The notes: generated by a model from the letters alone, not told the origin. Counted from the first letter of the stretch, positions 1-32,264 are shown. The stretch: 64,000 nucleotides of DNA from Raja brachyura (GCA_963514005.1 OY740797.1:19840001-19904000); one strand, 5' to 3'. Translations and numbers: made by a program.

Positions 1-20
1 GTAATTTATAGAGGCCAATT

Positions 21-450: not shown

Positions 451-3400
451 TCTGCAACCCTACCAGATGCGCCACTTTTACTGTAGGCTGCTATTTGTAG
501 GTCGTGGAATATGAAAAATGCAGGTTCCAGTACTAATGTTGTTGCTTATCCACTTTACATTTTTTTGTCTTCATTGATTACATTGAACAATGCAAAATGT
601 CACGGAACTATTTGTTACTTGTCTCGGTGTAAACGCATTTCCAATTGTTTGATTTTATTCAAAGCAAATTCTAGCGACGAGTTAGAATTTAGAATACAGT
701 CATCATAAAGATAGTGGTGCTATCTGTAGGTCGTGGAGTAGTGGTAATTAGAGGAGACTTTATCTCCTTGTTTGCTCAACTATAAACAAATGTAGTTAAC
801 GTTTCTTGCGACAATGTTCAAGTTGTGCACGACTCTATGACCTCGAAGAAAATTGAAAGTTCTTGATTCCGTTACCACACCATACAGTATGTTATTTATT
901 TTTTTATCGTTCCCGTTTATTATACCAATGTATCGGTTCAAATAAATGCTAAAGAGTCGCACAGAAATGCTTCGGTTACGGGATTTCTGTGCTGTGTGGT
1001 AGTTTGCTCTCTGCAAGTAATTGTTAGCAAGCATTGTTACAAAGATGCAGTAATACTGAGGTGAGGCTGAAAAGGAGAAGTAGTAAAAGCACAGTGGAAA
1101 TTATCACTCGCATTTCGAACGCATCTACTGCATTGGTGTGCTGCAGTGACTTTGCTAAGCAATAATAAGACAAACAGCTATCTGTTTTTTTCATGGGTAA
1201 GCCAATCAATGATCAGGAAAGGCTGCAGGAAGGTATGTCATCTTGTCATCTCCGCCTCATTTGGTCTGTGAAAGAAATGCAATATTGCCTGTTAGTCCAT
1301 TGTACAGTGATCAAGGAAAGCAATCAATTTTTCAACACAATTGGAATGTAGCCAACAATTATAATTTCCAGATTGCAGATAACGTATAAGAGTTTATGTT
1401 CATATTATTTATCCAGTCTTCTGCGGAGCCTTTCGTGGTCCAACGCAACAAATTTGTGGTAACACAAATATCCATAAAAAATATTCCCATTTTATTCTCT
1501 CCACAGTGCCATCAACACTTTGCTCACTCCTAGATTATACCACTTGCCTAAACATGGGGCATTTTAAATCTCTAATTAGCCTACCACCCCTCACGTGATT
1601 TGGGATGTGCGAAGTATTCAGAGCACCTCGGGAAACCCGCGAGGAGGCAGCAAATAACGTTCAACCTTCACACTGACAGCACCGAAAGCCAGGATTTGTT
1701 TTACCTTGAGTATAGACAAGGAGAAGCCATAATATCTCTGACACTGTGTGATCTTCGTTAGATAATATGGAAACGCTGTCAAGAGTCAAGAGTGCTTCTC
1801 ATATGTCCCAGATAGAACTAAGAAATTCTTAGCTGCAGCAGCACAACAGAAGAAGTAAACATAGTACTCTTTAAACAATATAATAAACCTCTCCGAGGTC
1901 CAGTGCCATCCTGCCACCTGTCTCCTTTGAGGTGGGTTTTCTGAATTCAGATTTCACTCTGTTCCTCCTGTCATTGTCTGAATTTCTCATATTTCCTGGC
2001 ACTGGATATGACCGCTGGGTGGAAAAACCTGTTGCCGATTACCTTGTCTGTTTCTTAATTTTGCGTTTATATTGGACAGCATTCTACATTAAAATCCGAG
2101 AACAAAGATAAAGGTAATTTTGCAGTGGGATGGTATCGTGCAGCTGAATTTGTTGTCTGCTCTATCTGGTTTCATGCCACAATTCAAAATTCATTACCGA
2201 CTTTTCCGCAGTCGTACAAGATCAAAATTTTGTTCACGTAACTTCATAATCAACACAAATAATTTCCTTTAACCTGATGTTTACTTGGAATGCTTTTCGT
2301 GCAAGCACTTTGCCTTTACCTCGACATTAACAACGTGCTCTTCGTTGCGTCGATATTTGGGTTTTTTCCCCCTCATTCAAGTTTAATGTTGCTAGGCAGA
2401 GGCAGCTTGATTGTTGTAGGCTTGTTTGGTGTGTCATTAATGATGGCATGTGTCTTTAAATTTTAGACCACCAGTGATATTGTGGGTGGGATTTATGACG
2501 TATTTTAGGGCGTGTTTGGAGCTGGGTTTCTTACACAGAAGCATAGTTTTTAGTTTAGTTTTGGACCAGCATGGGGAAGGTTTACCCTTTGATTATGCGA
2601 AGTGTAACGGAGACAGGAAGAGTTGTCTAACCTTTAAAGCAAAATGCTGGAGTTTGATGAAGATCATAGTGTGTGAGTCGGAAGTATTTTGGATGTGCCT
2701 TATTGTTTTCTATCAACAATAAATATTCTATTGATCAAAAGACTGTGTTGTGAAGATTTATCTGTGAAGAAGCTCTGAAGGTCTCTGACGGAGAGCGCGC
2801 ATGTGTATAACCACATTCTCCTTACTTATGTAGTCCATTTAGCGGCGAGAGGGAGTAATCTCTTGAACGATATAAAAATCTGCCGCTACACCTATTAGAA
2901 AGTGATATTCAACACAGCTAGCGGAGGGTCTGACGTAGTTCTTTAAATAGTGAAACAAACATACAGACTGATTGCAAAAAAAGGGGCACGATACCATTTG
3001 AACTGCACTCAATTACATTTCTCAAAATGTCATTCCCGAGAGGACTCAAAGTGCCAGTGTTCAACTTGTTTATTAATATTGTAGCTTGCGATTCATTTGC
3101 AAAATCTCTCTTCCAAATGCGATCCATTTCTCACTTCCCGCCATCTTATTCCGTCTCCGTTATCACCGTTTCCGGCTTCCATATAGATTTCATGCAGCGA
3201 TAGCAGTGCCCGCCGTATATCCCAGGCAACCTGGCCTATGCGAGCACGTTGTAGTGGGACGAGTCTGTCGTCTGCCCTTATGCACTTACTTGTACTTTCA
3301 TTCTTTGGTCGCAATTTATAGTAGCGAAGTAACCGAGCAATCCGCATCACTTTGGGATACAAGGAGAGTAGAGCATCCGGCGGAACAGCACACAAGAATA

Positions 3401-3651
3401 AACTGCTAATCACACACAGGTACCGTTGGAGATTAGGATTGAACGCGATCAGGACGGAACTGTGAGACTGCAGGTTTACTCGCTGCGCCCCTTCCAATTT
3501 TAGAGGTGACAGGCAAAATGGTTTCCTTCTGCGCTGCAAATTGCAGCCTGCAATGTTCTAAAATTATATGGCATGAAACGGATATCTGATGACTGTATAA
3601 TTTCTGTACTTGTCCAACCCTATTGGAAACAAGAACAATAGCTTCACCTAC

Positions 3652-3695
3652 CGGTTCTACGCTATGACTTGCTTCCACGGAGTTTGCATTAACAC
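3652..3695 (-). CDS. Probable cytoplasmic exon of VJ-C1 receptor copy A (GVNANSVEASHSVEP)
   Basis: Strong acceptor (T-tract + 'cgtgtag|') in phase 1, matching the TM exon donor, and a phase-0 donor 'CCG|GTAGGT'. Conserved in copy B (29012-29055). The true terminal exon is not resolved. Confidence 0.55.
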
Positions 3696-4161
3696 CTACA
3701 CGAAAAAAAAAGAAATCTCGAATAATATTTTAATGTCAGGAAAATCTAAGTTGCGCATTAGATTATAATCACATCTACTGCCTATGGACCCTTGAAGGCA
3801 GGCAACAATCCCGTATACACATCGGAGTACCACCGCCACAATGTAATGTGTTGGACATTACCTTCATATATACCATCCGAGTTAGATCTGGACAATCGGA
3901 GGATGCGAAGGTCTAAACCAAATACCTCATGCTTCAAAATCTGACTTTAAAGCTAATCAATACGCTAAGAATACAGATGTTTGAAACACACATACTCGAT
4001 GGATGATTGAATAATTCGAAAGGGCAGGGGAAATAATTGTAGTTTAACTTACAACTAATTACTAGTATTGCTTTGGTTTCTTGTTTCAATGATTCTCAGA
4101 ATGCACCATCCGCTTTTCTATCAACGGTTGTATTAAATGAAAAGTCAATCAAGGTTCTTAC

Positions 4162-4263
4162 CTCGTTGTGCCTTTAATGCGAATCTTGTCAAAATTATAA
4201 GCAGAACTACAATTGACAGTCCGCGCACGACATAACCGAGAATTTGAGTTTTGTCCGTGGTTT
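4162..4263 (-). CDS. Stalk/transmembrane exon of VJ-C1 receptor copy A (ETTDKTQILGYVVRGLSIVVLLIILTRFALKAQR)
   Basis: Acceptor 'tttttcgccatatccag|', donor 'CGAG|GTAAG', phase 1/1, 102 bp. Hydrophobic segment contains an Arg and is followed by basic residues. Confidence 0.85.
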
Positions 4264-4640
4264 CTGGATATGGCGAAAAATGAGAACGGTGAAACATAAA
4301 TACACAGACAGGGACCGAGACAAGAAGGCAGAGCAATCGTTCAATATTTTCCGCACAAAGATTTTATGACTGCCACATGGCACGCATTGTACGGTAATGG
4401 CGAATTTATAGAACAGACATTATACGGTGGCTCTTTGCAGAGGTTTGGTTATTAAGTTAAGATGACAGTTTAATTTCATTTTACAAAACTACGCCCGGTA
4501 GTTTGACAACAGTTTAAAAAGTCAGAATGCATTCTATATTCTGGATCTTACACCCTGGACCCGCCACCGCAGGTTCCAGTAAATATGAAAAGGAACTGGA
4601 TTTTTGTGTTTGCTCAACTATTTAATTGTATTAGAAAATA

Positions 4641-4712
4641 GACACAAAAGACAGGCAACATCTCTGGAGAGAAGGAATGAGAGACGATTCGGATCGAGAC
4701 CCTTGTTCAGAT
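4641..4712 (-). mobile_element. Penelope-like element fragment with degenerate hammerhead motif (paralogue ~29992-30082)
   Basis: 'gacacaaaag...catctctggagagaaggaatg...gacgattcggatcgagacccttgttcag' matches the recurrent Penelope-type repeat in this window. Confidence 0.6.
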
Positions 4713-4760
4713 TGTATTTCTGGGCAGGCTGGAGTCTGCGTAAAATGCCTCCAGGCTTAC

Positions 4761-4814
4761 CTTGCTCAAAAATGTAGCTGAAACTGGCAGGGACTGTAAG
4801 AGATACGTGTGATA
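4761..4814 (-). pseudogene. Remnant 3' end of a copy-B-type C1 exon (SHVSLTVPASFSYIFEQ|GTAAG)
   Basis: Nearly identical to 30132-30185, including the splice donor. It lies in the intron ~55 bp downstream of copy A's own C1 donor. Confidence 0.9.
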
Positions 4815-4868
4815 TGATCGAATTTGATCTACCGCCCCAATATCATATGTAACTGGCTCCAGTCTTAC

Positions 4869-5162
4869 CTTGGCCCAGGATGTAACTGAAACTGGCCGCC
4901 ACCTTCAGGGAGATATGTGATACCAGGCAGGTGTAAATATCTTTGCCCTCGCCAGGTTGCGTTATTTCCAAAAAACTAGAAGCCACAAACAATCCTTCTC
5001 CGCTCCGTGTTTTCACAGTTTCGATTCCAGTGCGAATTACCTCGTTATTTCTTAGCCAGAATATTTCTAATTTCTCCGGATAAAAGGCGCCAGTTTTGCA
5101 CACAAGTTTCCGTGGAGAGCCAAGTCCTTCAGCAGGAACAATTTTCAAGGGAGTTGGGGGAT
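4869..5162 (-). CDS. Ig C1-set exon of VJ-C1 receptor copy A
   Basis: DPPTPLKI...LVCKTGAFYPEKLEIFWLRN...GLFVASSFLEI...YTCLVSHISL shows the C1 hallmarks (C-x4-FYP, W, YxCxVxH). Acceptor 'tttttttttgcttaag|', donor 'CAAG|GTAAG', phase 1/1, 294 bp. Confidence 0.92.
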
Positions 5163-5414
5163 CTTAAGCAAAAAAAAACCACAGAATTTAAGGAGTTCCA
5201 ACATAAACTCTGTTCAGAATGGACGTTCCCGGGTATCGCGAGAAAGTGTTTGCCAGAAGCTTGCCGTGATTATTTAAAAGTGGCCATATTCGGATCATTC
5301 ATATGTTACAAAAAAAAAGAGCCATCATAATTGAAATATAACAGATGTGTATAGTGTGGTGGCATGAAGCGGTTATACATGAAGGTTAATGATTAATCTC
5401 GTTAGCTGTTTAAG

Positions 5415-6008
5415 TCGGGTTTGAAGAAGGGTTTCGGCACGAAACGGTGCCCATTTCCTTCGCTCCATAGATGCTGCTGCATCCGCTGAGTTTCTCCGGC
5501 ATTTTGTGTACCCTCAGCTGTTTAAGTAGTATATGAACGAAATCTCCTCAACCTGGTCAAAAAGACCCACTTCAAAATGTAATCACTACTCTACTCAATC
5601 CCACCTGCGCGAGATAACCAATTATGAGGTGTTTGCGCAGTAATCAACCAGAACCAGAAGCAGATATGGGTTTGAACTGCCGATCACAACCATTTACCAG
5701 CACATGAAACAAAGGCTGGGGCATTTTTCTCGCGCATTGAATGCTAATATTCAAAAATAGTGGTATCTATTACAAGCAATCTACGAGCGCACTTATTCAA
5801 TATCAGTGTGTAGGAAAGAACTGCAGATGCTGGTTTAAACCGAACATATGCTGGAGTAACTCAGCGGGACAGGCAACATCTCTTCGGAGAAGGAATGGGT
5901 GACGTTTCGGATCGAGGTTTGAAGAAGGGTCTCGACCCCAAACGTCACTCATTCCTTCTACCCAGAGATGCTGCCTGCCCCGCTGAGTTACTCCAGCATT
6001 TTGTGTCT
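5415..6008. mobile_element. Penelope-like fragments (5415-5512 and an inverted pair at 5808-6008) in the V-C1 intron of copy A
   Basis: 'tgaagaagggtctcgacccaaacgtcactcattccttct...gctgagttactccagcattttgtgtc' and its inverted copy 'gctggagtaactcagcgggacaggc'. Confidence 0.7.
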
Positions 6009-7060
6009 CTATACAAATCAGTTTCATCACAATCGACAGCACTAGATCGGCGTTAATGATGATAGCGTGCAGAAGCCAAATGAGGGAAAAGAAGAAGCTA
6101 TGTTTCTCGCTGTGCAGATTCTACTCATTTAGGTCTGCACGTAAAGGTCTATATTTGGCATTTATTAACGCGAACTCCTTCCGTTCGAGCTGCAGTCGGT
6201 GTCTAACTGGACGGGGAGTCGATTGTTGGGTTGCTTTGTCAGTTTATTACAAGCAATCCCTTTAGAAAGTTTGACTTAATTTACTTAATCCGGATAATTT
6301 TTAACGATGAAATAAATGTTACTGTTTATTCCAAGACTTTAAGCAATTTCAGTTGAGATGTTGTTTACTTCTTTTTCCCCCCGGACGGTGCCAAATTGGT
6401 GGGATAGACTGAAGATGTGTATTACAAAATTAGTGTCAAGCGTTTTCAAAACAAAAAAAAACATTTCATTGAAGTCAGCTTGGAGTCAACATCGATGAGT
6501 ACCACATGTGGGAACACCAAGGTCCTTGGGTTGCCGCTGCACATTGGTCTTGTGAGGTTTTAAAGCTGTCGATGTAGAATTGAGGCATGGCAGACTCTAC
6601 TATCGACGTATTAAAATTGCTCCTACTCTATTTTCTTAGTGATGAGAAACCTGGACATCACACTCCAGCCATTCAAACTAACAGGAGTATTATTTCAATA
6701 TCTCATTGCAAAACCTTTCTAACCACACCTCAGAATGAATTATTTCCATCTCAGCACTTAACCGTTCTCAGCGGTAAATCCATCTGGGAGATTGGCTTAA
6801 ATTGGCTTACGCCCATTCATTGCGGCAATGAAAAGGTGTCTCGCAAAGTCTCGTTCAATGCACAGAATAACCCTCTGGAGATTATGTACATTGTGCATTG
6901 TTTCATTTCGAATTACTGGTCTCTGTAATGCATTTATTTAAAATTGTTATTACCGGGTATTTATCAGCAGGCGATTTTTCATATTATCCTCGCGACTTGG
7001 TTTTACTTTACAAATGACATGGAACTGAAAATTGCTTATTTCCCTAACACACACACTCAC

Positions 7061-7366
7061 CAAATACAGTGATCTGGCTGCCACTTCCATTCCCGATAAC
7101 CTGATGCTGGAACTTTACTTGACAGTAATACAGGCCGGAGTCAGCGACACGCACATGTTGCAGAGTAAATGTTCCGCTTCCTGAATCTATCGTAAATTGT
7201 TTTCTACTGTCCGGTTCTAGGAATGTCTTCATGCCGCCCCTCCACCAATTAACGTCAATAGTGTCTTTCGATATTGGAAATTTGCAATACAAGATAGCAG
7301 TTTCTCCGCCGCCAACGTCCAAGTTGATGGGGAATTGAGACACTCTGCTCGAAGACACTTCGGCGG
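7061..7366 (-). CDS. V-set exon with germline-joined J-like segment, VJ-C1 receptor copy A
   Basis: VSQFP...ILYCKFP...VNWWR...TFTLQHVRVADSGLYYCQVK...IGNGSGSQITVF. Acceptor 'ttttttcccgacag|', donor 'TTTG|GTGAG', phase 1/1, 306 bp. No RSS at the 3' end. Confidence 0.93.
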
Positions 7367-7560
7367 CTGTCGGGAAAAAAGCAAGAACAATGGAAACAGT
7401 TGTACACACTGGACAGAGAAAACAAGAACCAACTGTCGAAAAGCACGAAACAACTATAAACCCACGAGGGCGTAACAGATGAACATAATAGCTCGAAACC
7501 AGGTCCGATTTTTCGAAAAATCACACTTAAACCAGAAATGGCACACATATTTAACTATAC

Positions 7561-7615
7561 CCTGTCTAAGTATAACCAGAAGAGCCATGGACCAAACTGT
7601 AACTTTCGCCGACAT
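7561..7615 (-). CDS. Leader (signal peptide) exon, copy A (MSAKVTVWSMALLVILRQ)
   Basis: ATG at 7615-7613, hydrophobic core, phase-1 donor 'CAGG|GTATAG'. Same 55-bp length as, and homologous to, the copy B leader. Confidence 0.8.
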
Positions 7616-8826
7616 ATTACAAGAATAAATTGCCAACTTGCTGTTAGAGTTGTTTACTCAAAACTCGCTCTGCGGAAAAGGAATTCATGAGTAAATATAT
7701 GAAACGTGTGACCGTGACGTAATATATCCCACGACTGCGGCAGAGTAATGGGTCCTAAGTTTTGTTTGGCTCGTGCGGCGGGAGAGGTCATAGCTCCCAT
7801 TATAACAAAGCCTTGCAATACTTCCTGAATCATGTTCACAATCCTCTCCCCGTGTTGACTCCCGTAGCATCCAGATTTCTACTCGGAACTAAATATGCAT
7901 CAGCTGCCTACTCAGTTAATCGCCACAAATCGTTTCCGCGTAGAAGGTAAGAAGTGCTTGTTAATATTTAGATGCACAAACGTAGACACACACCTTCCCT
8001 TGAATCTCCCCTCATTCCCAATTTGCGTTGTTCTCTTTCGCTCTTTCGATTATATACATTCAATCGACAATCACCCCTTTCGTTTCTTCCTGTTCAGCCC
8101 TCACCCATCGCCATCCGCAGCTTTCAATTGATTATGTTTCCATCTGACGCTTTATCTCTAACTCCGGTTGATATTCCTACAACACTAAATCTCCATGGTG
8201 GCTTTTGGTAACTAATATTTCTACTATTCTCATAAACACAATTGCAGCAATGTACTATGAGGAGTCCAGCAGCGTCCATACAGCTAGAAAATTGGCGCCA
8301 AGTCGAGACAGCTAACGTATGAATGAAATCTTTTTTTTCTTCCGATAAGGACCAGCAGAGCAATCCACTTATGCTGTTGACATCCACACAACACGGGAGA
8401 ATAGGGGCTGTAAATTAATCGAATGGGCCAATATAAATTAGGGAGATTTAAACCAAACTGTCAATCTTATAATTTCCTCCAAAGTATTGTTTAAAAAATC
8501 CTAGTAATGAAGGATTACTTCAAGTTTGGACTACAGGCAAGAAGCCAACGTGATTTGCGAGGCTGGTTTGAACTATTAATGTATTCCCCGTATCGTGGTT
8601 ATACTCACATCCCTCTGCACAAATCAATGAATTTGGGTTCAGAACATACATTACACGAGCAGAAACCCGTTGTAGATCAATTGGTTAAGTATTTTTCGTG
8701 CAAGTTAAATTTTTGATGCGCCTCAGTTAGAAGCCGTGTGCCCTTCAATGAAAGGACATAATATTCCAAATATATACAGTAATTTTTTGAATATTTTTAA
8801 ATGACTAAAATCGGGCAGGACCGTAT

Positions 8827-9115
8827 CGCAGCAGTAGAGTTGCTGCGCTTACAACGCCAGAGACCTGGGTTCGATCCTGACTACGGGTGCTGTATGCGTG
8901 GAGTTTGTATGTTCGCCACGTGACTGGCGTGGGTTTTCTCTGGGCGCTCCGGTTTCCGCCCACACTCCAAAGACGTACATGTTCGTAGGTTGATTGGCTT
9001 CAGTAAAGGTTGTAAATTTTCCCTGGCGTGGAGGATAATGCTAATGTACGGGGTGATCGCTGGTCGGCGCGGACTCTGTGGGTCGAAGGGCCCGTTTCCG
9101 CGCTGTATCTCTAAA
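8827..9115 (+). mobile_element. tRNA-derived SINE (V-SINE/HE1-like)
   Basis: A-box-like 'cgcagcagtagag', B-box 'ggttcgatcc', conserved 'ggagtttgtatgttc...gcgtgggtttt...ccggtttcc', tail 'ctgtatctctaaacta'. Confidence 0.8.
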
Positions 9116-10007
9116 CTATTACTAAATAAACTGCTTCTGCAAATGGTTTCTATTTGAACTTTCATGTAAAGATTGCGTAATGTTCGGGTTTTAAGTCTGT
9201 CGACACAAACCGTTCAAACGAAGAGCTGCAACAAGAACATTCCGGTTTCGGATGCTGGTCATGAAGATAATGAAGACTGGACTCAGATTTAAAGCTGCAA
9301 GTTGTTTCTATTTTAGTGATGACAGCAGTGTAAAGAAACCAGCGGCAGTTGGAGAAAACCTCAGAATAGAGTACACGGCAAATCTGACAAATTAAAGATT
9401 TCTGTGCATGTTTACAAGCTACTGTCGGCGATTCGCCATGGGCTGTTCTGCAATAATGGACCAATAATAATCTTACAAAAATGGATTTGAAGGCATTTTA
9501 TGTGCCACATTTTGAGGAAATGCATCGGTATATTCCCGTTGTTTAATAGATAACAAATTGCGCTACCGCAAGCGACTACTGAAATAGATTGTTTGCATTA
9601 TTAATTAAAGTCAATTAAATGTTTCCTAGATGTCTCCTAGATTTTTGAAGTTTCATTAAAGTAGATTCATTTAGTAAACAGCAGGCGCGGAAAGCTTTGG
9701 GTAACATAAAAAAAATGCGTGTTCTGCTTTGTGTCAAGTGTTTGAATACTTTTGATAGTCTCGACAAATACGATTATTCTTTAAATGAACTGGGAGACTA
9801 TGGACCGACTGTGAGGCTATTTTTACATTTTGAGGCAGATAAATTTTAACCAACGCACGAGATAATTTACTGTTTCTCTTTCTCCACAGATTGTCCTCGA
9901 CGACCTAGAATTCACAATAGATTTCGTGAAAATTTTCAGGTTTCAAAGTATCTACAGTTTTGCAATTTCTAGTAATTATCATGCCACAACTTTTTTTCCA
10001 AGTGTTC

Positions 10008-10370
10008 GCAGCGCCGGAGACCCGGGTTCGATCTAGACTACGGGCACTGTCTGTACGGAGTTTGTATGTTCTCCCCGTGACCGCGTGGGGTTTCTATCTC
10101 CGCGAAATTCGGTTTCTTCCCGCACTCCAATGACTTTGAAACATAGAAAATAGGTGCAGGAGTAGGCCATTCGAGCCTGCACCGCCATTCAATATGATCA
10201 TGTCTGATCATCCCACTCAGGTATGTAGGTATGCATGTATGTAGGTAAATTGACTTGGTAAATGTAAAAAATGTCTCTAGTGTGGGTAGGATAGTGTTAA
10301 TATGCGGGGATCGCTTATAGGCGCGGACCCGATGGGCCGAAGGGCCAGTTTTCGCGCTGCGTCTCAAGTA
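10008..10370 (+). mobile_element. SINE of the same family, interrupted by an inverted CR1 3' tail (~10138-10220)
   Basis: 'gacccgggttcgatc...ggagtttgtatgttctccccgtgacc'; insert 'gaaacatagaaaataggtgcaggagtaggccattc'. Confidence 0.75.
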
Positions 10371-10428
10371 AATTAAACAAAACTGGAATTTAGATGTACT
10401 GAAAATGCAAATGCACCAAACGAGCTCC

Positions 10429-10570
10429 AGGGGCTAGTGGAGTGAAGGGATATGGGGAGAAGGCAGGCACGAATTATTGATAGGGGACGATCAGCCATGA
10501 TCACAATGAATGGCGGTGCTGGCTTTAAGGGCCGAATGGCCTCCTCCTGCACCTATTTTCTATGTTTCTG
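10429..10570 (+). mobile_element. CR1-type LINE 3' UTR fragment
   Basis: 'ggatatggggagaaggcagg...gatcagccatgatc...gggccgaatggcctcctcctgcacctattttctatgtttc' matches the tail of the CR1 copies at 59640-59830. Confidence 0.8.
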
Positions 10571-12101
10571 TGTAAACGCATACCCCAGATGACCATCAAT
10601 TGCGACGTTATGCCAGTCCGTCTGCATTCTCCTTATCTCCTTATCTATTCGAGCGGCTCCTAAAGTCTATGAACTTCATACTTAATGCCAGCAAGTCATC
10701 TCTAATTACAGGCGATATCTTCTTTTTGTCAATAGAATCATCGCAACTTGTCAAATGTTGAATGGAGTACGTACTAAGCGCATCCACTTAGGTCAAATGC
10801 ACAGGGGTAGTCTTTCCAATTACCCTCACGGATATATTTCAGATCGTCTTTGCCAGAGAGGCACCACACGTCTCTGCTCTTCTGAGCAAGAGTGACAACG
10901 CGTCAACCATATGAAATACCCAAGAGGCCCAAGCAGGCAAGAAATGATGAAAAGATAATATTTTGAATCATTTCATCTTGACTTATAATGCGTCAGGTAA
11001 TGGCACATAGTTCCATGCTCTGAGAAAGAATAACACTTAAAAATGAGCCATTTAATTGTCATGAAGATGTTTGCCTCGTATTTATTTTCTCCCCAGAACG
11101 AACACGAAATAATGAAGGAAAAAACAATAAAGGTGAGAAGGAAAGACGGGCCTCGACCCGAAACGTCACCCATTCCTTCTCTCCAGAGATGCTGCCTGTC
11201 CCGCTGTGTTAATCCTACATTTTATGTCTACCAACGAAATAATGAAGACTTCACTACAACCTTAGAAATGCTTCATTGACGGAGGCAGACTTTTAATAAA
11301 TGATCTTAAAATAAACTTATTGTTCTACACTTAAGTATCTAAAGTGATAACACGACCCGTCCGGGACTTGTTTGTTTCAAATAGGCACAGCATTCGACCG
11401 CAAGCCTTTCCATGACGTCGCCAGCAGACTCGCGAGAGCAGTTCTATTCTCATGCTGTGTGTTATTTATATTTTGACAAGCTAGAAATGCAGTGGTCAAT
11501 TAGTTAGTCAGTGGATGATTAGTTAGTCAGTAGACGATCGAACAAAAACTTCTTTTCGATCAATCTTTTTTATAGAAACGTGGCAGAAGCTCGCATGGAC
11601 ACATTCGTGTTTGCGACACGAGCTTTTTGTGTCTATCTTCTGTTTAACCCAGCATCTGCAGTTCCTTTGTACATATTTATATGCCTATCTAAAGGACTCT
11701 TCAAAAACTACTGTCGTATTTTCTTCCACCACCCCTGGTAACGCGTTCCAGGCACTTCCTGCGTCAAAAACGGAACCAGCTTAACTCTAAACCTCTGACG
11801 TTAAAACAATACCTTCCTATCTTTCATGGGTTCTGACGAACAACACCATCTGTGCCTTTCCTTATTTTCTATTATTCAGCCATGTGGCCAGTCTCAGAAG
11901 AAAGCAAGTCAAGAGCGTTTTATTGTCATATGTCCCAGATAGAACAACGACATTCTTATTTGCAGCAGCGTAACAGAATATGTAAACATAGTACACTAAG
12001 CTTTACAATATACGAGAAAAAAGTCCAGTGTGTGTATATATAACATACATTTACCCACTCCGCCCCCCACACCCACACACACATATATATATATATATAT
12101 A

Positions 12102-25553: not shown

Positions 25554-25665
25554 CTTCACGTAGTCACTCACGTGACTCCGAAGTAAAATAGTGAGATTAA
25601 ACGAGAACTTACCTGTTTGAAGTTTGATCTTTATTTTATAAGGAGTTACGATGAGGGATTACGTG
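25554..25665 (+). other. DIRS internal complementary region (ICR)
   Basis: 'ctcacgtgactccgaagtaaaa' is the reverse complement of the left terminus. The adjacent 'tagtgagattaaacgagaacttacctg...gagggattacgtg' is the reverse complement of 25813-25891. Confidence 0.92.
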
Positions 25666-25989
25666 CCCTCCACTTCCAACCCTCATAATGTAAATGATCA
25701 TCTGGTAGTTCTAGTCTATTTTGAGCCTTACTATTTTACTTCGGCTATTGGTTCTGTGTTTTTCATGCCGCTGCTTTGAAGTATGCCGATCCAGCGCCAG
25801 GCGGGGCTTCTTCACGTAATCCCTCATCGTAATTCCTCATAAAATAAAGATCAAACTTCGAACAGGTAAGTTCTCGTTTAATCTCACTATTAACTTACAA
25901 CCCTGCAGGTTATGTGGATCTAGGAGGAAACGGAGCACACACGCGGCTACTGGGAGAACGCTGTAAACTCCAGACAGATAACACCGTAA

Positions 25990-26396
25990 TGCCCCTGTCC
26001 CACATAGGAAACCTGAACAGAAACCTCTGGTGACCTTGCGGCCCACCCAAGGTTTCCATGAGTCGCCAGAGGTTTTGGTCACTTGCCTGGAAAGCCTCCG
26101 CCAAAGCGTGAGCTGCATCTACTGACCAAAGATCCCACAGAATATTTGCTACCAACCGCACAAACACACCGTGAAGGTGGGGGCCAGGGACAGCGGAGGA
26201 GCGCTGTCTGCGCAGTGAAGGGGAAGGTAAACGGCTGCCACAGAGCATGGAAAATAGAAAAAGCCTTGACTACGCGGAAACCACTTTCCACCATTAGGGA
26301 GAGTGACCAAAACCACCTGGAACCTCATGGAAACCTTGTGTGGGGCGCAAGGTCTCCAGAGATTTCTGTTCAGGTTTCCTAAGTGGGACAGGGGCA
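25990..26396. mobile_element. PIF/Harbinger-type MITE inside a SINE
   Basis: TIRs TGCCCCTGTCCCAC / GTGGGACAGGGGCA flanked by a TAA TSD on both sides. Confidence 0.85.
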
Positions 26397-29011
26397 TAAC
26401 TCAGGGCCAAACCTGGTCTCTGGCGCAGTGAGGTATCTGCATCTCTACCAGATGTGCCACTTTTGCTGTAGGCTGCTATCTGTAGGTCGTGGAATATGAA
26501 AAATGCAGGTTCCAGTATTAATGCTGTTGCTTATCCACTTTCCTTTTTTTTTGTCTTAATTGATTACATTGAACAATGCAAAATGTCATGGAACGATTTG
26601 TTACTTGTCTCGGTGTAAACGCATTTCCAATTGTTTGATTTTAGTCAAAGCAACTTCTAGCGACGAGTTAGAATTTGGAATACAGTCATCATAAAGATAG
26701 TGGTGCTATCTGTAGGTCGTGGAGTAGTGGTAATTAGAGGAGACTTTATCTCCTGGTTTGCTCAACTACAAACAAATGTAGTTAACGTTTCATGCGACAA
26801 TGTTCAAGTTGTGCACGACTCTATGACCTTGAAGAAAATTAAAAGTTCTTGATTCCGATACCATTATACATCAGTATGTTATTTATTTTTTATCGTTCCC
26901 GTTTATTATACCAATGTATCGATTCAAATAAATGCTAAAGAGTCGCACAGAAATGCTTCAGTTACGGGATTTCTGTACGGTGTGGTATTTTGCTCTCTGC
27001 AAGTAATTGTTAGCAAGCATTGTTACAAAGATGCAGTAATACTGAGGTGAGGCTGAAAAGGAGAAGTAGTAAAAGCACAGTGGAAATTATCACTCGCATT
27101 TCGAACGGATCTACTGCATTGGTGTGCTGCAGTGACTTTGCTAAGCAATGATAAGACAAACAGCTATCTGTTTTTTTCATGGGTAAGCCAATCAATGATC
27201 AGGAAAGGCTGCAGGAAGGTATGTCATCTTGTCATCTCCGCCTCATTTGGTCTGTGAAAGAAATGCAATATTGCCTGTTAGTCCATTGTACAGTGATCAA
27301 GGAAAGCAATCAATTTTTCAACACAATTGGAATGTAGCCACAATTATAATTTCCAGATTGCAGATAACGTATAAGAGTTTATGTTCATATTATTTATCCA
27401 GTCTTCTGCGGAGCCTTTCGTGGTCAAACACAACAAATTTGTAGTAACACAAATATCCATTAAAAATATTCCCATTTTATTCTCTCCACAGTGCCATCAA
27501 CACTTTGCTCACTCCTAGATTATACCACTTGCCTAAACATGGGACTTTTAAATCTCTAATTAGCCTACCACCCCTCACATGATTTGGGATGTGCAAAATA
27601 TTCAGAGCACCTCGGGAAACCCGCGAGGACGCAGCAAATAACGTTCAACCTTCACACTGACAGCACCGAAAGCCAGGATTTGTTTTACCTTGTGTATAGA
27701 CGAGGAGAAGCCATAATATCTCTGTCACTGTGTGATCTTCGTTAGATAATATGGAAACCCTGTCAAGAGTCAAGAGTGCTTCTCATATGTCCCAGATACA
27801 ACTAAGAAATTCTTAGCTGCAGCAACACAACAGAATAAGTAAACATAGTACTCTTTAAACAATATAATAAACCTCTCTGAGGTCCAGTGCCATCCTGCCA
27901 CCTGTCTCCTTTGAGGTGGATTTTCGTTTGAGTTTGACTTTGAGGTTTACCGTTTGACTATGCGAAGTGTAAGGGAGACACGAGGAGTTGTCTAACCTTT
28001 AAAGCGATATGCTGGAGTTTGATGAAGATTATAGTGTGTGAGTCGGAAACTTTTGGATGTACCTTATTGTGTTCTATCAACAATAAATATTCTATTGATC
28101 AAAAGACTGTGTTGTGAAGATTTATCTGTGAAAAAGCTCTGAAGGTCTTTGACGAGAGCTCGCATGTGTATAACCACATTCTCCTTAATCATGTAGTCCA
28201 TTTAGCGGCGAGAGGGAGTAATGTCTTGAACGAAATAAAATCTGCCGCTACACCTATTAGAAAGTGATATTCAACACAGTTAGGTGAGGGTCTGACGTAG
28301 TTCTTTAAAGAGTGAGTCTGAAATATAACCATACAGACTAATTGCAAAAAAAGGGGCATGATACCATTTGAACTGCACTCAATTACATTTCTCAAAATGT
28401 CATTCCCGAGAGGATTCAATGTGCCAGTGTTGGACTTGTTTATTAGTATTATAGCTTGCGATTCATTTGAAAAATCCCTCTTCCAAATGCGATCAATTTC
28501 TCACTTCCCGCCATCTTATTCCGCCTCCGTTATCACCGTTTCCGGCTTCCCTATAGATTTCATGCAGCGATAGCAGTGCCCGCCGTATATCCCAGGCAAC
28601 CTGGCCGATGCGAGCACGTGGTGGTGGGACGAGTTTATCGTCTGCCCTTATGCACTTACGTGTACTTTCATTCTTAGGTCGCAATTTATAGTAGCGAAGT
28701 ATCCGAGCAATCCGCATTACTTTGGACTACAAGGGGAGTAGAGCATCCGGCGGAAAAGCACACAAGAATAAACTGCAAATCACACACAGGTACCGTTGGA
28801 GATTAGGATTGAACACGATCAGGACGGAACTGTGAGACTGCACCCCTTCCAATTTTAGAGGTGACAGGCAAAATGGTTTCCTTCTGCGCTGCAAATTGCA
28901 GCCGGCAATGTTCTAAAATTATATGGAATGGAACTGATATATTCTCTGCTGATCGTATAATTTCTGTACTTGTCCAACCCTATTGGAAACAAGAACAATA
29001 GCTTCACCTAC

Positions 29012-29055
29012 CGGTTCTACGCTATGACTTGCTTCGACGGAGTTTGCATTTACAC
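29012..29055 (-). CDS. Probable cytoplasmic exon of VJ-C1 receptor copy B (GVNANSVEASHSVEP)
   Basis: Same splice sites and peptide as 3652-3695; the two nucleotide differences I see are synonymous. Confidence 0.55.
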
Positions 29056-29521
29056 CTACACGAAAAAAAAAGAAATCTCGAATAACATTTTAATGTCAGG
29101 AAAATCTAAGTTGCGCATTAGATTATAATCACATCTACTGCCTATGGACCCTTGAAGGCAGGCGACAATCGCGTATACGCATCGGAGTACCACCGCCACA
29201 ATGTAATGTGTTGTACATTACCTTCATATATACCATCCCCGTTAGATCTGCACAACCGGAGGAAGCAAAGGTCTAAACCAAATAACTCATGCTTCAAAAT
29301 ATGACTTTAAAGCAAATCAATACGCTAAGAATACAGATGTTTGAAAAACACACACTCAATGGATGATTGAATAATTGGAAAGGGCAGGGGAAATAATTGT
29401 AGTTTAACTTACAACTAATTACTAGTATTGCTTTGGCTTCTTGTTTCAATGATTCTCAGAATGCACCAACCGCTTTTCTATCAACGGTTGTATGAAATGA
29501 AAAGTTAATCAAGGTTCTTAC

Positions 29522-29623
29522 CTCGTTGTGCCTTTAATGCGAATCTTGTTAAAATTATAAGCAGAACTACAATTGACAGTCCGCGCACGACACTTCCGAG
29601 AATTTGAGTTTTGTTCGTGGTTT
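29522..29623 (-). CDS. Stalk/TM exon copy B (ETTNKTQILGSVVRGLSIVVLLIILTRFALKAQR)
   Basis: Acceptor 'gccatatccag|', donor 'CGAG|GTAAG', open frame, TM Arg conserved. Confidence 0.85.
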
Positions 29624-30131
29624 CTGGATATGGCGAAAAATGAGAACGGTGAAACATACATACACAGACAGGGACCGGTACACAAGAAGGCAGAGCAATC
29701 GTTCAATATTTTCTGCACAAAGGTTTTATGACTGCCACATGGCACGCATTGTACGGCAATGGCGAATTTATAGAACAGATCACTTTATACGGTGGCTCTT
29801 TGCAGAGGTTTGGTTATTAAGTTAAGATGACTGTCCAATTTCATTTTACAAAACTACGCCCGGTAGTTTGACAACAGTTTAAAAAGTCAGAATGCATTCT
29901 GTATTCTGGATCTGACTCCCTGGACACACAGTAAATATGAAAATGAACTGGATTTTTGTGTTTGCACAACTATCTAATTATATTAGAAAATAGACACAAA
30001 AGAGCTGGAGTAACTCAGCTGGACAGGCAACATCTCTCGAGCGAGGAATGGGAGACGTTTCGGATCGAGACGCTTGTTCAGATTCTATTTCTCGGCAGGC
30101 TGGATTCTGCGTAAAACGCCTCCAGGCTTAC

Positions 30132-30428
30132 CTTGCTCGAAAATGTAGCTGAAACTGGCAGGGACTGTAAGAGATACGTGTGATACCAGGCAGGTGTAAA
30201 CAGTTTTGCCTGGAGCAGGCTGCGTGTCGTGCAAAAAACTGGAAGCCTCATAAAATCCATCCGCTGTTCTGTTTCTCACGATCAAAATACCGGTCAAAAT
30301 TTCCACGCTGTTTCTTTGCCAGATGATTTTTAATTCCTCCGGATAAAACGCAGCCGTTTTACACACGAGTTGCGGCAAATGCGCTGCACTTCCTTCAATA
30401 GCGACAATTTTCAATGGAGTTGGGGGAG
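30132..30428 (-). CDS. Ig C1-set exon copy B
   Basis: PPTPLKI...LVCKTAAFYPEELKIIWQRN...DGFYEASSFL...YTCLVSHVSL. Acceptor 'tattgttccag|', donor 'CAAG|GTAAG', 297 bp. Confidence 0.92.
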
Positions 30429-31697
30429 CTGGAACAATATAAAAAAGCGTGAAACTGCAAAATATATTTTATTTCAATTAACATATTTGTCGCTGAACAG
30501 TTGCTGCTGCCTCATGTTATCCGTGTGGTTGTTTGTTGAGTTTATAATTTTTTAATAAATTATTTTATGGAGGATATCATGGTAAGTAGTGCAATTGAAA
30601 CAAAGCATAAATGGAGTGAACTTTAGTACTGCTGCCTCGCGGGGTTCGCGCGATTATTAAGAAATAATGTGACACAGGTATTGCTCAGTAAGATTCCGTG
30701 ACAGTGCTTTATGTTGAATTCAAAACCACGCATTTCTTCTGAACATTTGCTCTTTCTTATCTGCATATGGTAGTTACAGAAAATGGACTGCACTGAGTGG
30801 CAGAAGTACATCGGGGACAACAATTGATTTTCTCGAAAAACACGCAAGGATCAAGCGAGCAAACTCTGTTTCTCATTTCATATATTTTATTAACAAGACA
30901 TTCACGAACATGGTTCAATTTGTGCTGGAGCCACTGTCAGTAATATTTAGCGAGCGGGAGAGTTAATTGTAATTTATTTTGTCAATTGATTGCGTAATCT
31001 CCTTAATGTCGTTTGTGTTTAAGCATTTTTACTTTCCTAAATTGATGTAATAACATCTTATTGTACTATCATTATTAATTAATAAAGCGACGTCAGTTTT
31101 TTCCCTGTGCCATATAAATGATTACCAAGCAAAGCTCTATTCTACACGATGTTATAACCATGGATCTATTTTAAATAAGAAATAATATCGGAGAATTTCC
31201 GTTGTAGTTCCTTTTTTTCTTTTATCATTCCATGAACTTTCCTTGAGACTGTGAAAGTGTAAGCAAAATTACCCACCTCAAAACTGTGAGATCAATTTCT
31301 CCTCCGTTTTCAGTTGATGGAAAAGTTTGTCGGGTGGGAAGTTTGCAACTTTCTGGAAATTCGGAGTAACGTGAATTTGGTTGGGTATTTGAAAAGCGGG
31401 AGGTCAAAATATAATTTTGCCTTCCAAATTACAAGAGCCATAACCAGGGTAGTGTCACTATGCCTTTGTAAGATAACCCGGAGTAATAAAAAACAAAACT
31501 ATAACAGAACTCTCGTTGTCGTACATTGACCGACGGATAGAATATTTTTCACTGTGTTCCCTTTATTTCAGATTTCCATCGCGGAAGTAACCATTAAAAT
31601 TATAGAACTAGATAAGATTAATATTTCCTCCACCAGCAAGCTTTAGTTACATTGCAACAGATGAACATATCCCACTACCCGTAACAAAGACACTTAC

Positions 31698-31994
31698 TTA
31701 ACACAATTAGCTGGGAGCCAGTTCCATTGCCGATAAGTTGCAGTTGATGTTTCACTCGACAGTAATATATCCCGGCGTCTGCGACACTCACATTCAGCAA
31801 AGTAAATGTACTCCTTCCTTTGTCTACTTTGAATAGTTTTCTGTTGTCCGGTTCCATAAATGTCTTCTCGCCCTCTCTCCACCAAGAAACGTCAGCGGTT
31901 TCTTTTAATATTGGAAATTTGCAGAACATGGACTCATTGTTGCCCCTTGAGACCCTCAGGAATGTGGGGAATTGTTCCACTTTGCTCGAAGTTG
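31698..31994 (-). CDS. V exon with germline-joined J-like segment, copy B (acceptor uncertain)
   Basis: VEQFP...MFCKFP...VSWWR...TFTLLNVSVADAGIYYCRVK...IGNGTGSQLIVL; donor 'TTAA|GTAAG'. The acceptor position homologous to copy A reads CAC, not CAG; an in-phase AAG lies 9 nt downstream. Confidence 0.85.
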
Positions 31995-32209
31995 CTTTTG
32001 TCAGTGGCAGAAATAAGTAAATATGATGAAAACAGTTGCACATACAGCACCAAGAAAAAGAGCCAATGGATACACAAATATAAAATAATTCGGAAATAAT
32101 TGTTAGCCAATTGCAGAAACGTTGTATATTTAATTTGCTGTGGCATACTATTGTAAAATATTGACACACATGATTTGCTTAGCGAAATCGGTTCAGAAAC
32201 TAAGCATAC

Positions 32210-32264
32210 CTTGACAAACCAAAGCAAGAAGACCCATGTACCGAACCATTGCTTTCACCGGCAT
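32210..32264 (-). CDS. Leader exon copy B (MPVKAMVRYMGLLALVCQ)
   Basis: ATG at 32264-32262, phase-1 donor 'CAAG|GTATGC', homologous to the copy A leader. Confidence 0.8.

What the first reader, a model, noticed from the sequence alone, without database searches (positions are those of the whole stretch)
3652..32264. Tandem pair of non-rearranging 'VJ-C1-TM(Arg)' antigen-receptor-like genes
Seen: two minus-strand genes with the exon plan leader / V / C1 / TM / probable cytoplasmic exon and phase-1 junctions. The V exon already contains the J-like G strand (IGNGSGSQITV; IGNGTGSQLIV) and runs directly into a splice donor with no RSS. The second domain is a true C1-set domain (FYP, W, YTCLVSH). 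Known: VJ+C1 is the architecture of TCR chains and Ig light chains after V(D)J joining, and C1 domains are otherwise largely confined to Ig, TCR, MHC, tapasin, SIRP and some B7-family proteins; NKp30/NCR3 has a germline VJ and a TM Arg but no C1. Inference: this is a germline-encoded, TCR-chain-shaped activating receptor family, a candidate relative of the pre-RAG antigen-receptor ancestor in a cartilaginous fish. Automated pipelines would probably label it SIRP-, NCR3- or Ig-lambda-like. I cannot tell whether this exact family has been described.
Basis: partly seen in the sequence, partly recalled or inferred. Interest (0 to 1): 0.88.

Follow-up and report, generated by a model that had tools for sequence, protein, structure and literature searches.

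The report
Skate VJ-C1 activating immune receptor pair
Two neighbouring, non-rearranging genes in a skate-type genome each encode a membrane receptor with one antibody-like V domain (J strand built in), one C1 constant domain and an arginine in the membrane anchor; they are activating-type members of a large shark, ray and chimaera receptor family that exists only as inconsistently named automatic predictions.

Summary
Both minus-strand genes have intact leader, V(J), C1, TM and tail exons, phase-1 junctions, GT-AG sites and no RSS. Pfam calls V/I-set and C1-set.

They are not orphans. Every relative I could name comes from Chondrichthyes (sharks, rays, skates, chimaera), and in each species all copies lie on one chromosome. 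NCBI names them inconsistently: SIRP-alpha-like, NCR3LG1-like, Ig-lambda-like or tapasin-related-like. Many members carry ITIM/ITSM tails and others a TM arginine, so this is a paired inhibitory/activating family that works most like SIRP or NKp30.

Both window genes are the activating type. Gene A belongs to one batoid lineage and gene B to another. Gene A's 3' half is a recent copy of B's (92-96% identity, against 72-74% for the V and C1 exons). Decayed ITIM exons lie downstream, so both derive from inhibitory ancestors.

The family scores about equally against Ig light chains, SIRP-alpha and UrIg2. The "pre-RAG ancestor relative" reading is therefore neither shown nor excluded. No RNA data were available. 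I found no paper describing the family. This scan already met the same family elsewhere on this chromosome (s1-880670, s1-880906).

The parts
7561..7615 (-). Gene A leader exon (MSAKVTVWSMALLVILRQ + 1 base, phase 1)
   Evidence: Read. ATG at 7615-7613, donor gt at 7560-7559. Similar to the leaders of Mobula A-lineage proteins.
7061..7366 (-). Gene A V(J) exon: short V/I-type Ig domain ending in the J-like strand IGNGSGSQITVF, then a donor
   Evidence: V tree: A lineage, 96*. No RSS.
4869..5162 (-). Gene A C1-set exon
   Evidence: Pfam C1-set 44.2 bits. C1 tree: A lineage, 96*.
4761..4814 (-). Scar: 3' end of a B-type C1 exon (..VSLTVPASFSYIFEQ + donor) just downstream of gene A's own C1 exon. 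It marks the breakpoint of the B-to-A copy.
   Evidence: Read. The blastn block A 2578-4814 = B 27943-30185 ends here. A contig of another organism spans 3400-5069 (record 9).
4162..4263 (-). Gene A TM exon (ETTDKTQILGYVVRGLSIVVLLIILTRFALKAQR), Arg in the helix
   Evidence: Closer to the Mobula B-lineage TM (37.4 bits) than to the A-lineage TM (23.1 bits).
3433..3695 (-). Gene A tail exon. It has a conserved donor-like CCG|GTAGGT at 3652/3651. If that site is read through, the frame stays open to the stop at 3435-3433.
   Evidence: The read-through tail ..EPVGEAIVLVSNR resembles the ends of annotated Mobula short forms.
3069..3074 (-). AATAAA, candidate poly(A) signal of gene A. The homologous site in B is at 28444.
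   Evidence: Inference only.
2329..2401 (-). Weak relic of an inhibitory-tail exon (LCLATLNLNEGEK..RRNEEHVV against LAYATLNVRENKK..RRQDEHVVY). Both tyrosines are lost and there is a frameshift.
   Evidence: At noise level on its own; counted only because it is collinear with the next relic.
1212..1271 (-). Relic ITIM exon downstream of gene A (SQTK*GGDDKMTYLPAAFPD against SQTKRNGADKLTYAALQLPD), with a stop codon
   Evidence: 25.0 bits, against 17.6 +/- 1.4 in 200 dinucleotide shuffles, none of which reached it.
32210..32264 (-). Gene B leader exon (MPVKAMVRYMGLLALVCQ + 1 base)
   Evidence: Resembles the Narcine leader.
31698..31994 (-). Gene B V(J) exon, ending IGNGTGSQLIVL
   Evidence: 69% identical to Mobula P0001.
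30132..30428 (-). Gene B C1-set exon
   Evidence: Pfam C1-set 32.6 bits. C1 tree: B lineage.
29522..29623 (-). Gene B TM exon (..ILGSVVRGLSIVVLLIILT..), Arg in the helix
28919..29055 (-). Gene B tail exon with read-through to a stop (..EPVGEAIVLVSNRVGQVQKLYDQQRIYQFHSI*)
27198..27257 (-). Relic ITIM exon downstream of gene B, a copy of 1212-1271
18..4814 (.). Recently shared 3' block of gene A, 92-96% identical to 25889-30185 of gene B, introns and flank included
   Evidence: blastn.

Best explanation
Both genes encode type I membrane glycoproteins. Each has a signal peptide, one short V-like (I-type) Ig domain with a germline J strand that probably binds the ligand, one C1-set domain, a short stalk, a TM helix with an arginine, and a short tail without a tyrosine motif.

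They are the activating-type members of an old paired inhibitory/activating receptor family restricted, as far as I could see, to cartilaginous fish. Relatives with almost the same outer part carry neutral TM helices and ITIM/ITSM-like tails.

By analogy with NKp30, SIRP-beta and activating KIR/LILR, the arginine should recruit an ITAM adaptor (FcR-gamma/CD3-zeta or DAP12 type). That would turn ligand binding into an activating signal that counterbalances the inhibitory relatives.

Genes A and B represent two ectodomain lineages that split before skates and rays diverged. Both arose from inhibitory genes, and gene A later received the TM/tail half of gene B by unequal exchange or gene conversion.

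Shown here: gene structure, family membership, lineage placement, the chimera and the relic exons. Inferred: adaptor pairing, activating function, expression and the 3' end of the mRNA. The ligand is unknown.
For: - Structure and domains.
- Family: 12 close relatives. The profile search found 160 proteins at E<1e-30; about 80 of the 150 listed are short (520 residues or fewer) and mostly family-like. All 30 clusters that I named and the 31 strongest of the 36 hits are chondrichthyan (two of these clusters have other labels: P0024 'titin-like' and one Logan fragment with no name or species). Each species' copies lie on one chromosome.
- Paired signalling: many relatives carry LTYAAL and TEYAxL/I tails, while others have a TM Arg and a short tail. 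On the C1 tree, 13 Arg forms against 44 ITIM forms need at least 12 changes of state.
- Lineages: C1 and V trees agree.
- Chimera. An independent contig from another organism bridges the junction.
- Relic ITIM exon: 0 of 200 shuffles reach its score.
- Constraint: dN/dS between A and B is 0.42 for V and 0.28 for C1.
- Fold: an AlphaFold model of relative P0185 has mean pLDDT 87.7 with two Ig domains and a TM helix.
Against: - No RNA run holds the locus, and the reads I could lay were genomic contigs only. Splicing, expression and the 3' end are therefore unproven for this species.
- The two tails diverge after ..KLY, and neither carries a recognisable motif.
- The Arg position is not conserved across the family, and Mobula B-lineage short forms have no Arg.
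- No adaptor was examined.
Confidence: 0.62

Rival explanations
1. The family is simply the cartilaginous-fish SIRP family (co-orthologues of SIRP-alpha/beta) that lost one C1 domain. The window genes would then be SIRP-beta equivalents.
For: - 'SIRP-alpha-like' is the most common automatic name.
- The language-model search of the whole inhibitory form P0012 puts SIRP-alpha clusters first, at 0.96-0.97.
- SIRP-alpha D3 gave the highest score of any separately scored single C1 domain in the five alignments printed (45.7 bits), and D1-D2 scores 63.5.
- The ITIM tails resemble SIRP-alpha's.
- One skate member is V-C1-C1.
Against: - With the tail removed, the ectodomain's nearest clusters are generic C1/B7-like, not SIRP.
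- Ig light chains score as high or higher than SIRP-alpha (65.7-68.5 bits).
- The two C1 domains of the V-C1-C1 skate protein are each other's closest relatives, so that is a recent internal duplication.
- The TM residue is Arg at varying positions, not the SIRP-beta Lys.
- ITIM plus TEYxxI/L tails also occur in Siglecs, PILR and CEACAM1 (own knowledge).
- No tree with SIRP sequences and no synteny could be obtained.
Confidence: 0.25
2. One or both window genes are unexpressed, decaying duplicates (young pseudogenes) in a birth-and-death cluster.
For: - No RNA evidence.
- Gene A is a chimera with a scar.
- The tails differ by an indel after KLY.
- Downstream exons are already decayed.
- The genes sit among LINE insertions.
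Against: - All exons are open, and all splice sites and the initiator ATG are intact.
- The canonical Cys, Trp, YYC, FYP and YTCxVxH residues are kept.
- dN/dS is 0.28-0.42.
- The locus, junction included, is kept at about 98.7% identity in a contig from another organism.
Confidence: 0.1
3. The chains are relics of the pre-RAG VJ-C1-TM antigen-receptor ancestor and pair through their C1 domains as TCR-like homo- or heterodimers (A with B).
For: - The VJ + C1 + TM with a basic residue is the plan of a TCR chain.
- C1 domains usually pair (own knowledge).
- Lineages A and B have both been kept since before the skate/ray split.
- The best Foldseek matches are Fab light chains.
Against: - The complex prediction gave no answer.
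- There is no stalk cysteine for an interchain bond.
- The V domain is I-type.
- The family evolves by rapid birth and death with repeated switches of signalling, like NK or myeloid paired receptors.
- Similarity to Ig/TCR is no greater than SIRP's.
Confidence: 0.06
4. They are B7-H6 (NCR3LG1) orthologues, that is ligands for NKp30 and not receptors.
For: The automatic name 'NCR3LG1-like' on several relatives, and the V-C1-TM layout shared with B7 proteins.
Against: - No B7-H6 or other B7 chain is among the best 60 PDB matches of either family profile.
- A TM Arg and ITIM/ITSM tails are receptor features.
- Another note of this scan reports a separate B7-H6-like gene elsewhere in this genome (s1-880671, not checked here).
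Confidence: 0.04

Closest known systems
SIRP family (SIRP-alpha, -beta, -gamma)
   Same: A germline V domain with a J-like G strand is followed by C1-set domains. Inhibitory ITIM members are paired with activating members that have a basic TM residue. The genes form a multigene cluster. The profile scores are comparable, and SIRP clusters are the nearest named clusters for the whole inhibitory form.
   Different: There is one C1 domain, not two. The V domain is I-type and short. The TM residue is Arg at varying positions, not Lys. No orthology has been shown, and the ectodomain alone is not SIRP-specific. I saw no member outside Chondrichthyes.
NKp30 / NCR3
   Same: A non-rearranging I-type VJ domain, a TM arginine and a short tail. 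NCR3 is multicopy in sharks according to PMC12227049.
   Different: NKp30 has no C1 domain between V and the membrane, and no ITIM-bearing twins are known for it (own knowledge).
UrIg and UrIg2 (elasmobranch non-rearranging VJ-C1 genes; PMC12227049, PDB 9dmx)
   Same: A single-exon VJ is followed by C1-set domains, there is no RSS, and both are specific to cartilaginous fish.
   Different: UrIg and UrIg2 carry several C1 domains (VJ plus nine to eleven in shark UrIg2) and form disulfide-linked homodimers. No TM region was detected in UrIg, and each is described as a single locus. Here there is one C1, a TM Arg or an ITIM tail, and a large family. The profile score to UrIg2 V-C1 (54.7 bits) is lower than to IgL or SIRP-alpha.
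Germline-joined Ig light chains of skates
   Same: The L / VJ / C1 exon order and the joined VJ. Several relatives are auto-named 'Ig lambda-1 light chain-like'. The best Foldseek and PDB matches are light chains.
   Different: Light chains are secreted partners of heavy chains with a full V domain. These genes have TM and tail exons that are conserved in relatives.
B7-H6 (NCR3LG1) and the B7 family
   Same: The V + C-type + TM layout, and the automatic name.
   Different: No specific similarity, and the signalling parts are receptor-type.
Other non-rearranging VJ receptors: chicken/fish PRARP, teleost NITRs, amphioxus IgVJ-C2
   Same: A germline VJ domain. NITRs have paired activating and inhibitory forms (own knowledge). 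The amphioxus IgVJ-C2 structure 5xpv is a hit of the V exon.
   Different: In those proteins the second domain is C2/I-type or absent, not C1-set.

Membership tests
Unnamed chondrichthyan VJ-C1 paired receptor family (NCBI models 'PTPNS1-like', 'NCR3LG1-like', 'Ig lambda-1-like') | Leader / V(J) / C1 / TM / tail exon plan with phase-1 junctions | tested here: met
   The exon ends coincide with the domain boundaries of the annotated proteins.
Unnamed chondrichthyan VJ-C1 paired receptor family (NCBI models 'PTPNS1-like', 'NCR3LG1-like', 'Ig lambda-1-like') | Sequence groups inside the family, both domains concordantly | tested here: met
   V exon B is 69% identical to Mobula P0001. C1 and V trees place A and B in two batoid lineages.
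Unnamed chondrichthyan VJ-C1 paired receptor family (NCBI models 'PTPNS1-like', 'NCR3LG1-like', 'Ig lambda-1-like') | Either a TM Arg with a short tail or a neutral TM with an ITIM/ITSM tail | tested here: met
   The window genes have a TM Arg and no tyrosine motif. Relatives show both types.
SIRP | V domain with a J-like G strand followed by C1-set domains | tested here: met
SIRP | Two C1-set domains (D2, D3) | tested here: not met
   One C1 exon per gene. The only V-C1-C1 relative seen duplicated its own C1.
SIRP | Orthology by phylogeny or synteny with the tetrapod SIRP locus | not testable with these tools
The window holds no flanking conserved gene.
SIRP | Activating member has a TM Lys pairing with DAP12; inhibitory member binds SHP-1/2; the ligand is CD47 | not testable with these tools
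   The TM residue here is Arg. Binding was not assayed.
B7-H6 / NCR3LG1 | Specific sequence similarity to B7-H6 or other B7 ectodomains | tested here: not met
   None is among the best 60 of 6805 or 8604 PDB matches of the family profiles.
NKp30 / NCR3 | A single VJ domain joined directly to the stalk and a TM with Arg | tested here: not met
   A C1-set exon lies between V and TM. Only the TM Arg is shared.
Rearranging Ig/TCR chains | Separate V and J segments flanked by RSS | tested here: not met
   The J strand is inside the V exon, which ends in a donor. No RSS.
Germline-joined Ig light chain | Secreted V-C1 chain without TM exons | tested here: not met
   TM and tail exons are present and conserved.
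UrIg / UrIg2 | VJ followed by several C1 domains; closest similarity to UrIg-type V and C | tested here: not met
   There is one C1 domain. UrIg2 V-C1 scores 54.7 bits, below IgL and SIRP-alpha.

The most novel reading that the evidence does not exclude
The family is neither a SIRP orthologue nor a B7. It is an independent surviving branch of the VJ-C1-TM stock from which SIRPs, UrIg and the rearranging antigen-receptor chains all came. It has been kept only in cartilaginous fish as a large paired-receptor cluster, and its A and B lineages may work as C1-paired dimers with an ITAM adaptor, which would be a germline analogue of a TCR.
Probability: 0.1. Interest if true: 0.9.

Novelty: new variant of a known kind. 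Interest (0 to 1): 0.6.

Why it matters
C1-set domains are almost confined to molecules of adaptive immunity. A V domain with a built-in J strand next to a C1 domain is the layout expected of the gene that the RAG transposon split.

In the papers I could search, only UrIg and UrIg2 are discussed as such relics in sharks. SIRP has been proposed as a link on the mammalian side (PMC2785349).

A large, old family of VJ-C1-TM receptors across sharks, rays and chimaeras, with both inhibitory and arginine-bearing activating forms, adds a third player. Its place in that history can now be tested directly with trees, synteny and structures. It also offers candidates for the still unknown NK-type or myeloid receptors of cartilaginous fish.

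This window adds a clear example of how activating members arise: from inhibitory genes, by a TM arginine, loss of the ITIM exons and exchange of the 3' half between diverged paralogues.

Tried and rejected
- Exons were searched one by one by reference, and full-length comparisons used database relatives.
- RNA evidence: the look-up of sequencing runs listed no RNA run. Read laying on four runs gave only genomic contigs with even cover over the introns. All listed joints lie in repeats at 4.6-6.0 kb, and none is an exon junction.
- Complex prediction on the Mobula A-lineage and B-lineage ectodomains returned 'no answer'. It counts neither for nor against pairing.
- Foldseek against the PDB returned only Fab light chains at low TM-scores (0.31-0.35) because of the elbow angle. 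It does not discriminate between families.
- A tree including SIRP, B7-H6, TCR, tapasin and MHC domains could not be built, because no such sequences were obtainable from the tools. Only human light chains served as outgroup.
- Papers PMC3709836 (B7H6/NKp30 evolution) and PMC10530332 (UrIg) are not held.
- The second relic exon (2329-2401) is not significant on its own.
- The RSS reading is rejected.

Full report
**What is there.** Reading the minus strand gives two genes with the same plan.

| Exon | Gene A | Gene B |
|---|---|---|
| Leader | 7615-7561 | 32264-32210 |
| V | 7366-7061 | 31994-31698 |
| C1 | 5162-4869 | 30428-30132 |
| TM | 4263-4162 | 29623-29522 |
| Tail | from 3695 | from 29055 |

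- All junctions are phase 1 with GT-AG.
- Pfam scores the V exons as V-set, I-set and Ig_3 at about 28-36 bits. It scores the second exons as C1-set at 44.2 and 32.6 bits, against a cut-off of 21.
- The V exons end in IGNGSGSQITVF and IGNGTGSQLIVL. Both fit the J core G-x-G-[ST]-x-[LI]-x-V and run directly into a donor.
- A heptamer/spacer/nonamer scan finds nothing at either V exon. There are 10 weak matches in the whole window, and the only nearby one is on the other strand, upstream of V-A.
- The TM exons carry an arginine seven residues into the helix.
The 'V' domain is short, with 54 residues between the cysteines. It hits I-set proteins such as ROBO, contactin and titin at least as well as antibody V domains. 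In an AlphaFold model of a close relative (mean pLDDT 87.7) it has no C'' strand.

**Rules followed.** I did not search a joined spliced protein. Exons were searched by reference, and full-length comparisons used database proteins. N stretches were left alone. No contig that I took for human turned up.

**The genes are members of a large family.**
- The V exon of B found two Mobula proteins at 68-69% identity. One of them, used as query, found 12 relatives in Mobula, Hypanus, Narcine and Scyliorhinus.
- These annotated models have exactly the exon boundaries I read in the window (alignment A1).
- A profile search of 1.84 billion representatives gave 160 proteins at E<1e-30. Of the 150 listed, about 80 are proteins of 520 residues or fewer, most matching the profile in one stretch. 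The rest of the top list are giant multi-Ig proteins scoring by summation.
- I named 30 of the clusters, and a profile word-search named 31 more strong hits. All are from Chondrichthyes: Callorhinchus, Heptranchias, Heterodontus, Scyliorhinus, Chiloscyllium, Hemiscyllium, Stegostoma, Mustelus, Carcharodon, Cetorhinus, Pristiophorus, Amblyraja, Leucoraja, Narcine, Hypanus, Hemitrygon and Mobula.
- Below them the score falls from about 150-200 bits to 82 bits or less, for a goldfish CD22-like protein and human lambda chains.
- Within each species all members sit on one chromosome-sized record.
- The automatic names are inconsistent: SIRP-alpha-like (the most common), SIRP-beta-1-like, NCR3LG1-like, Ig lambda-1 light chain-like, tapasin-related-like, CD276 homolog, PD-L1-like, MHC class II beta-like, or uncharacterized.

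**It is a paired inhibitory/activating family.**
- Many members have a neutral TM helix and a tail of 80-150 residues with motifs such as LTYAAL, TEYAQL/TEYAEI and TLYADV.
- Others have a TM arginine and a short tail.
- On the C1 tree, 13 Arg-type rows against 44 ITIM-type rows need at least 12 changes of state. Activating forms have therefore arisen, or been exchanged, again and again next to inhibitory ones.
- The arginine sits at different positions in different members. A second, distinct activating TM type (R...(D/E)H) is shared by several members, those that I named being sharks.

**The two window genes in that context.**
- The C1 and V trees agree. Gene A groups with Mobula P0010-P0013 and P0185 (starred, 96). 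Gene B groups with the Narcine, Hypanus and Mobula P0001-P0007 lineage. Both lie inside a batoid clade (99), next to a shark clade.
- The A/B split is therefore older than the skate/ray divergence. This fits dS of 0.74-0.93 between their V and C1 exons, with dN/dS of 0.42 and 0.28.
- By contrast, everything 3' of position 4814 in gene A is 92-96% identical to gene B, introns and 4 kb of flank included. The C1 and V exons are only 72-74% identical, and the V-C1 introns do not align.
- The breakpoint is visible as a scar. The last 50 bases of a B-type C1 exon, with its donor, lie at 4761-4814, just after gene A's own C1 exon.
- The shared TM exon is closer to Mobula B-lineage TM exons (37-39 bits) than to A-lineage ones (23 bits). 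So the copy went from B to A.
- A 2.2-kb contig from a run of a different organism lies on 3400-5069 with 22 differences. It bridges the TM exon, the scar and the A-type C1 exon, so the chimera is not an assembly artefact (record 9).

**Origin from inhibitory genes.**
- In ITIM-bearing relatives, the tail exon ends ..EEP and is spliced to further exons. In both window genes that donor (CCG|GTAGGT) is intact.
- What lies downstream has decayed. At 1271-1212, and in the copy at 27257-27198, the frame reads SQTK*GGDDKMTYLPAAFPD, against SQTKRNGADKLTYAALQLPD in Mobula. It contains a stop, and the ITIM is spoiled.
- This match scores 25.0 bits. In 200 dinucleotide shuffles of the 3.65-kb flank the score was 17.6 +/- 1.4, and none reached it.
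- A weaker collinear relic lies at 2401-2329. It has lost both tyrosines, has a frameshift, and is not significant on its own.
- If the donor is read through, the tails are ..EPVGEAIVLVSNRVGQVQKLY.. This resembles the ends of annotated Mobula short forms (..DPVGEVTRLVSER....GEPVGDTGFTFCF). An AATAAA follows at homologous places, 3074 and 28444.
- The 3' end is an inference.

**How it most likely works.**
- Shown: two intact genes for V(J)-C1-TM(Arg) membrane proteins. Both are under past purifying selection, and both derive from inhibitory ancestors in a family that keeps inhibitory twins.
- Inferred: the arginine recruits an ITAM adaptor, and the proteins deliver activating signals on binding the same kind of ligand as their inhibitory relatives, as for NKp30, SIRP-beta, and activating KIR and LILR.
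- The ligand and the expressing cells are unknown.
- No RNA run holds the locus, and the four runs I could lay are genomic. Expression is unproven.

**Comparison with known families.** Family profiles against all PDB sequences give the per-envelope scores below (one search is similar).

| PDB target | Bits |
|---|---|
| Lambda chain, V (part) + C | 68.5 |
| Kappa chain, V + C | 65.7 |
| SIRP-alpha D1-D2 | 63.5 |
| SIRP-alpha D3 alone | 45.7 |
| UrIg2 V-C1 | 54.7 |
| UrIg2 C3 | 35.4 |
| IgG CH1 and CH3 | about 26 |

- No B7 chain is among the best 60.
- The language-model atlas puts SIRP-alpha clusters first for a whole inhibitory member (0.96-0.97). For the ectodomain alone it returns only generic C1/B7-like clusters (0.91-0.93). 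Part of the SIRP likeness therefore lies in the tail.
- Foldseek returns Fab light chains.
- The family works like SIRP or NKp30, but I cannot file it as a member of either. SIRP has two C1 domains, and the one V-C1-C1 skate relative duplicated its own C1. NKp30 has no C1.
- It is not an Ig light chain, because it has TM exons. It is not UrIg/UrIg2, because it has one C1 and lower similarity. It is not a rearranging receptor, because it has no RSS.
- I could not build a tree with SIRP, TCR, B7-H6 and tapasin sequences, because none could be brought in through the tools. Whether the family is a diverged SIRP co-orthologue or an independent VJ-C1 branch stays open.
- A test of A-B ectodomain pairing gave no answer.

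**Literature.** Five full-text searches and reading of the UrIg2 paper (PMC12227049), the shark MHC paper (PMC10751288), the SIRP-alpha structure paper (PMC2785349) and the elephant shark genome paper (PMC3964593) turned up no description of this family. The UrIg2 paper treats UrIg and UrIg2 as the non-rearranging VJ-C1 relics of elasmobranchs, names NCR3 as the other non-rearranging VJ gene, and does not mention SIRP-like genes. Two key papers were not held, so a description elsewhere cannot be excluded.

**Earlier notes of this scan.**
- The same family was already followed up on this chromosome: s1-880906, 0.21 Mb beyond the window's end, and s1-880670, 4.9 Mb beyond it.
- First readers also noted it at about 5.1 Mb (s1-880689, and s1-880923 with ITIM tails).
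- My family-level conclusions were reached independently and agree with those notes.
- This window adds the chimera, the relic ITIM exons, the two old batoid lineages and the count of signalling switches.

**Verdict.** The genes are real and apparently intact. They are ordinary members of an extraordinary and apparently undescribed family. The link to the antigen-receptor ancestor remains a hypothesis with the same standing as SIRP's.

Noticed in passing
window 4761-4793 (-): The C1 scar is preceded by an AG (4795-4794) and a pyrimidine-rich run, and it keeps its donor. As a 33-base phase-1/phase-1 cassette it would insert VPASFSYIFEQ in frame between C1 and TM of gene A.
   Followed up: no
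window 1942-2577: A 636-bp stretch of gene A's 3' flank has no counterpart in gene B's flank (the blastn blocks stop at 1941 and resume at 2578). It contains the weak first relic tail exon.
   Followed up: partly
P0185 (Mobula birostris), P0004: A Mobula A-lineage ectodomain also sits on a B-type TM/tail with an Arg, but the Arg is four residues away from the window's. This looks like a parallel or older exchange of the signalling half between the two lineages.
   Followed up: partly
P0008, P0015, P0035, P0051, P0062, P0104, P0134: A second, distinct activating TM type, with Arg near the start and D/E-H at the end of the helix (e.g. VVITRLVLGFLVILGLLGIIVDH), is conserved among several members of the family; the four whose species I looked up are sharks.
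   Followed up: no
P0023 (Amblyraja radiata), P0069 (Leucoraja erinacea): A skate member has V-C1-C1. Its two C1 domains are nearly identical sisters on the tree, so this is a recent internal exon duplication that mimics the SIRP layout.
   Followed up: partly
window 18715-20888 (-): A LINE remnant between the two genes, with endonuclease and reverse-transcriptase ORFs in pieces (Pfam Exo_endo_phos_2 and RVT_1). A further RT ORF lies at 50363-51613 (+).
   Followed up: partly
window 23075-25300 (+): Three long ORFs (356, 213 and 91 aa) without Pfam matches at E<0.001. This is probably another retroelement between the genes.
   Followed up: partly
window 12000-14000: A GC-rich (57%) low-complexity stretch with proline-rich ORFs on both strands, between the two genes.
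   Followed up: no
P0024 (Carcharodon carcharias, 1105 aa, 'titin-like'): A protein with ten C1-like stretches among the profile hits. By size and layout it may be a UrIg2 orthologue under a misleading automatic name.
   Followed up: no
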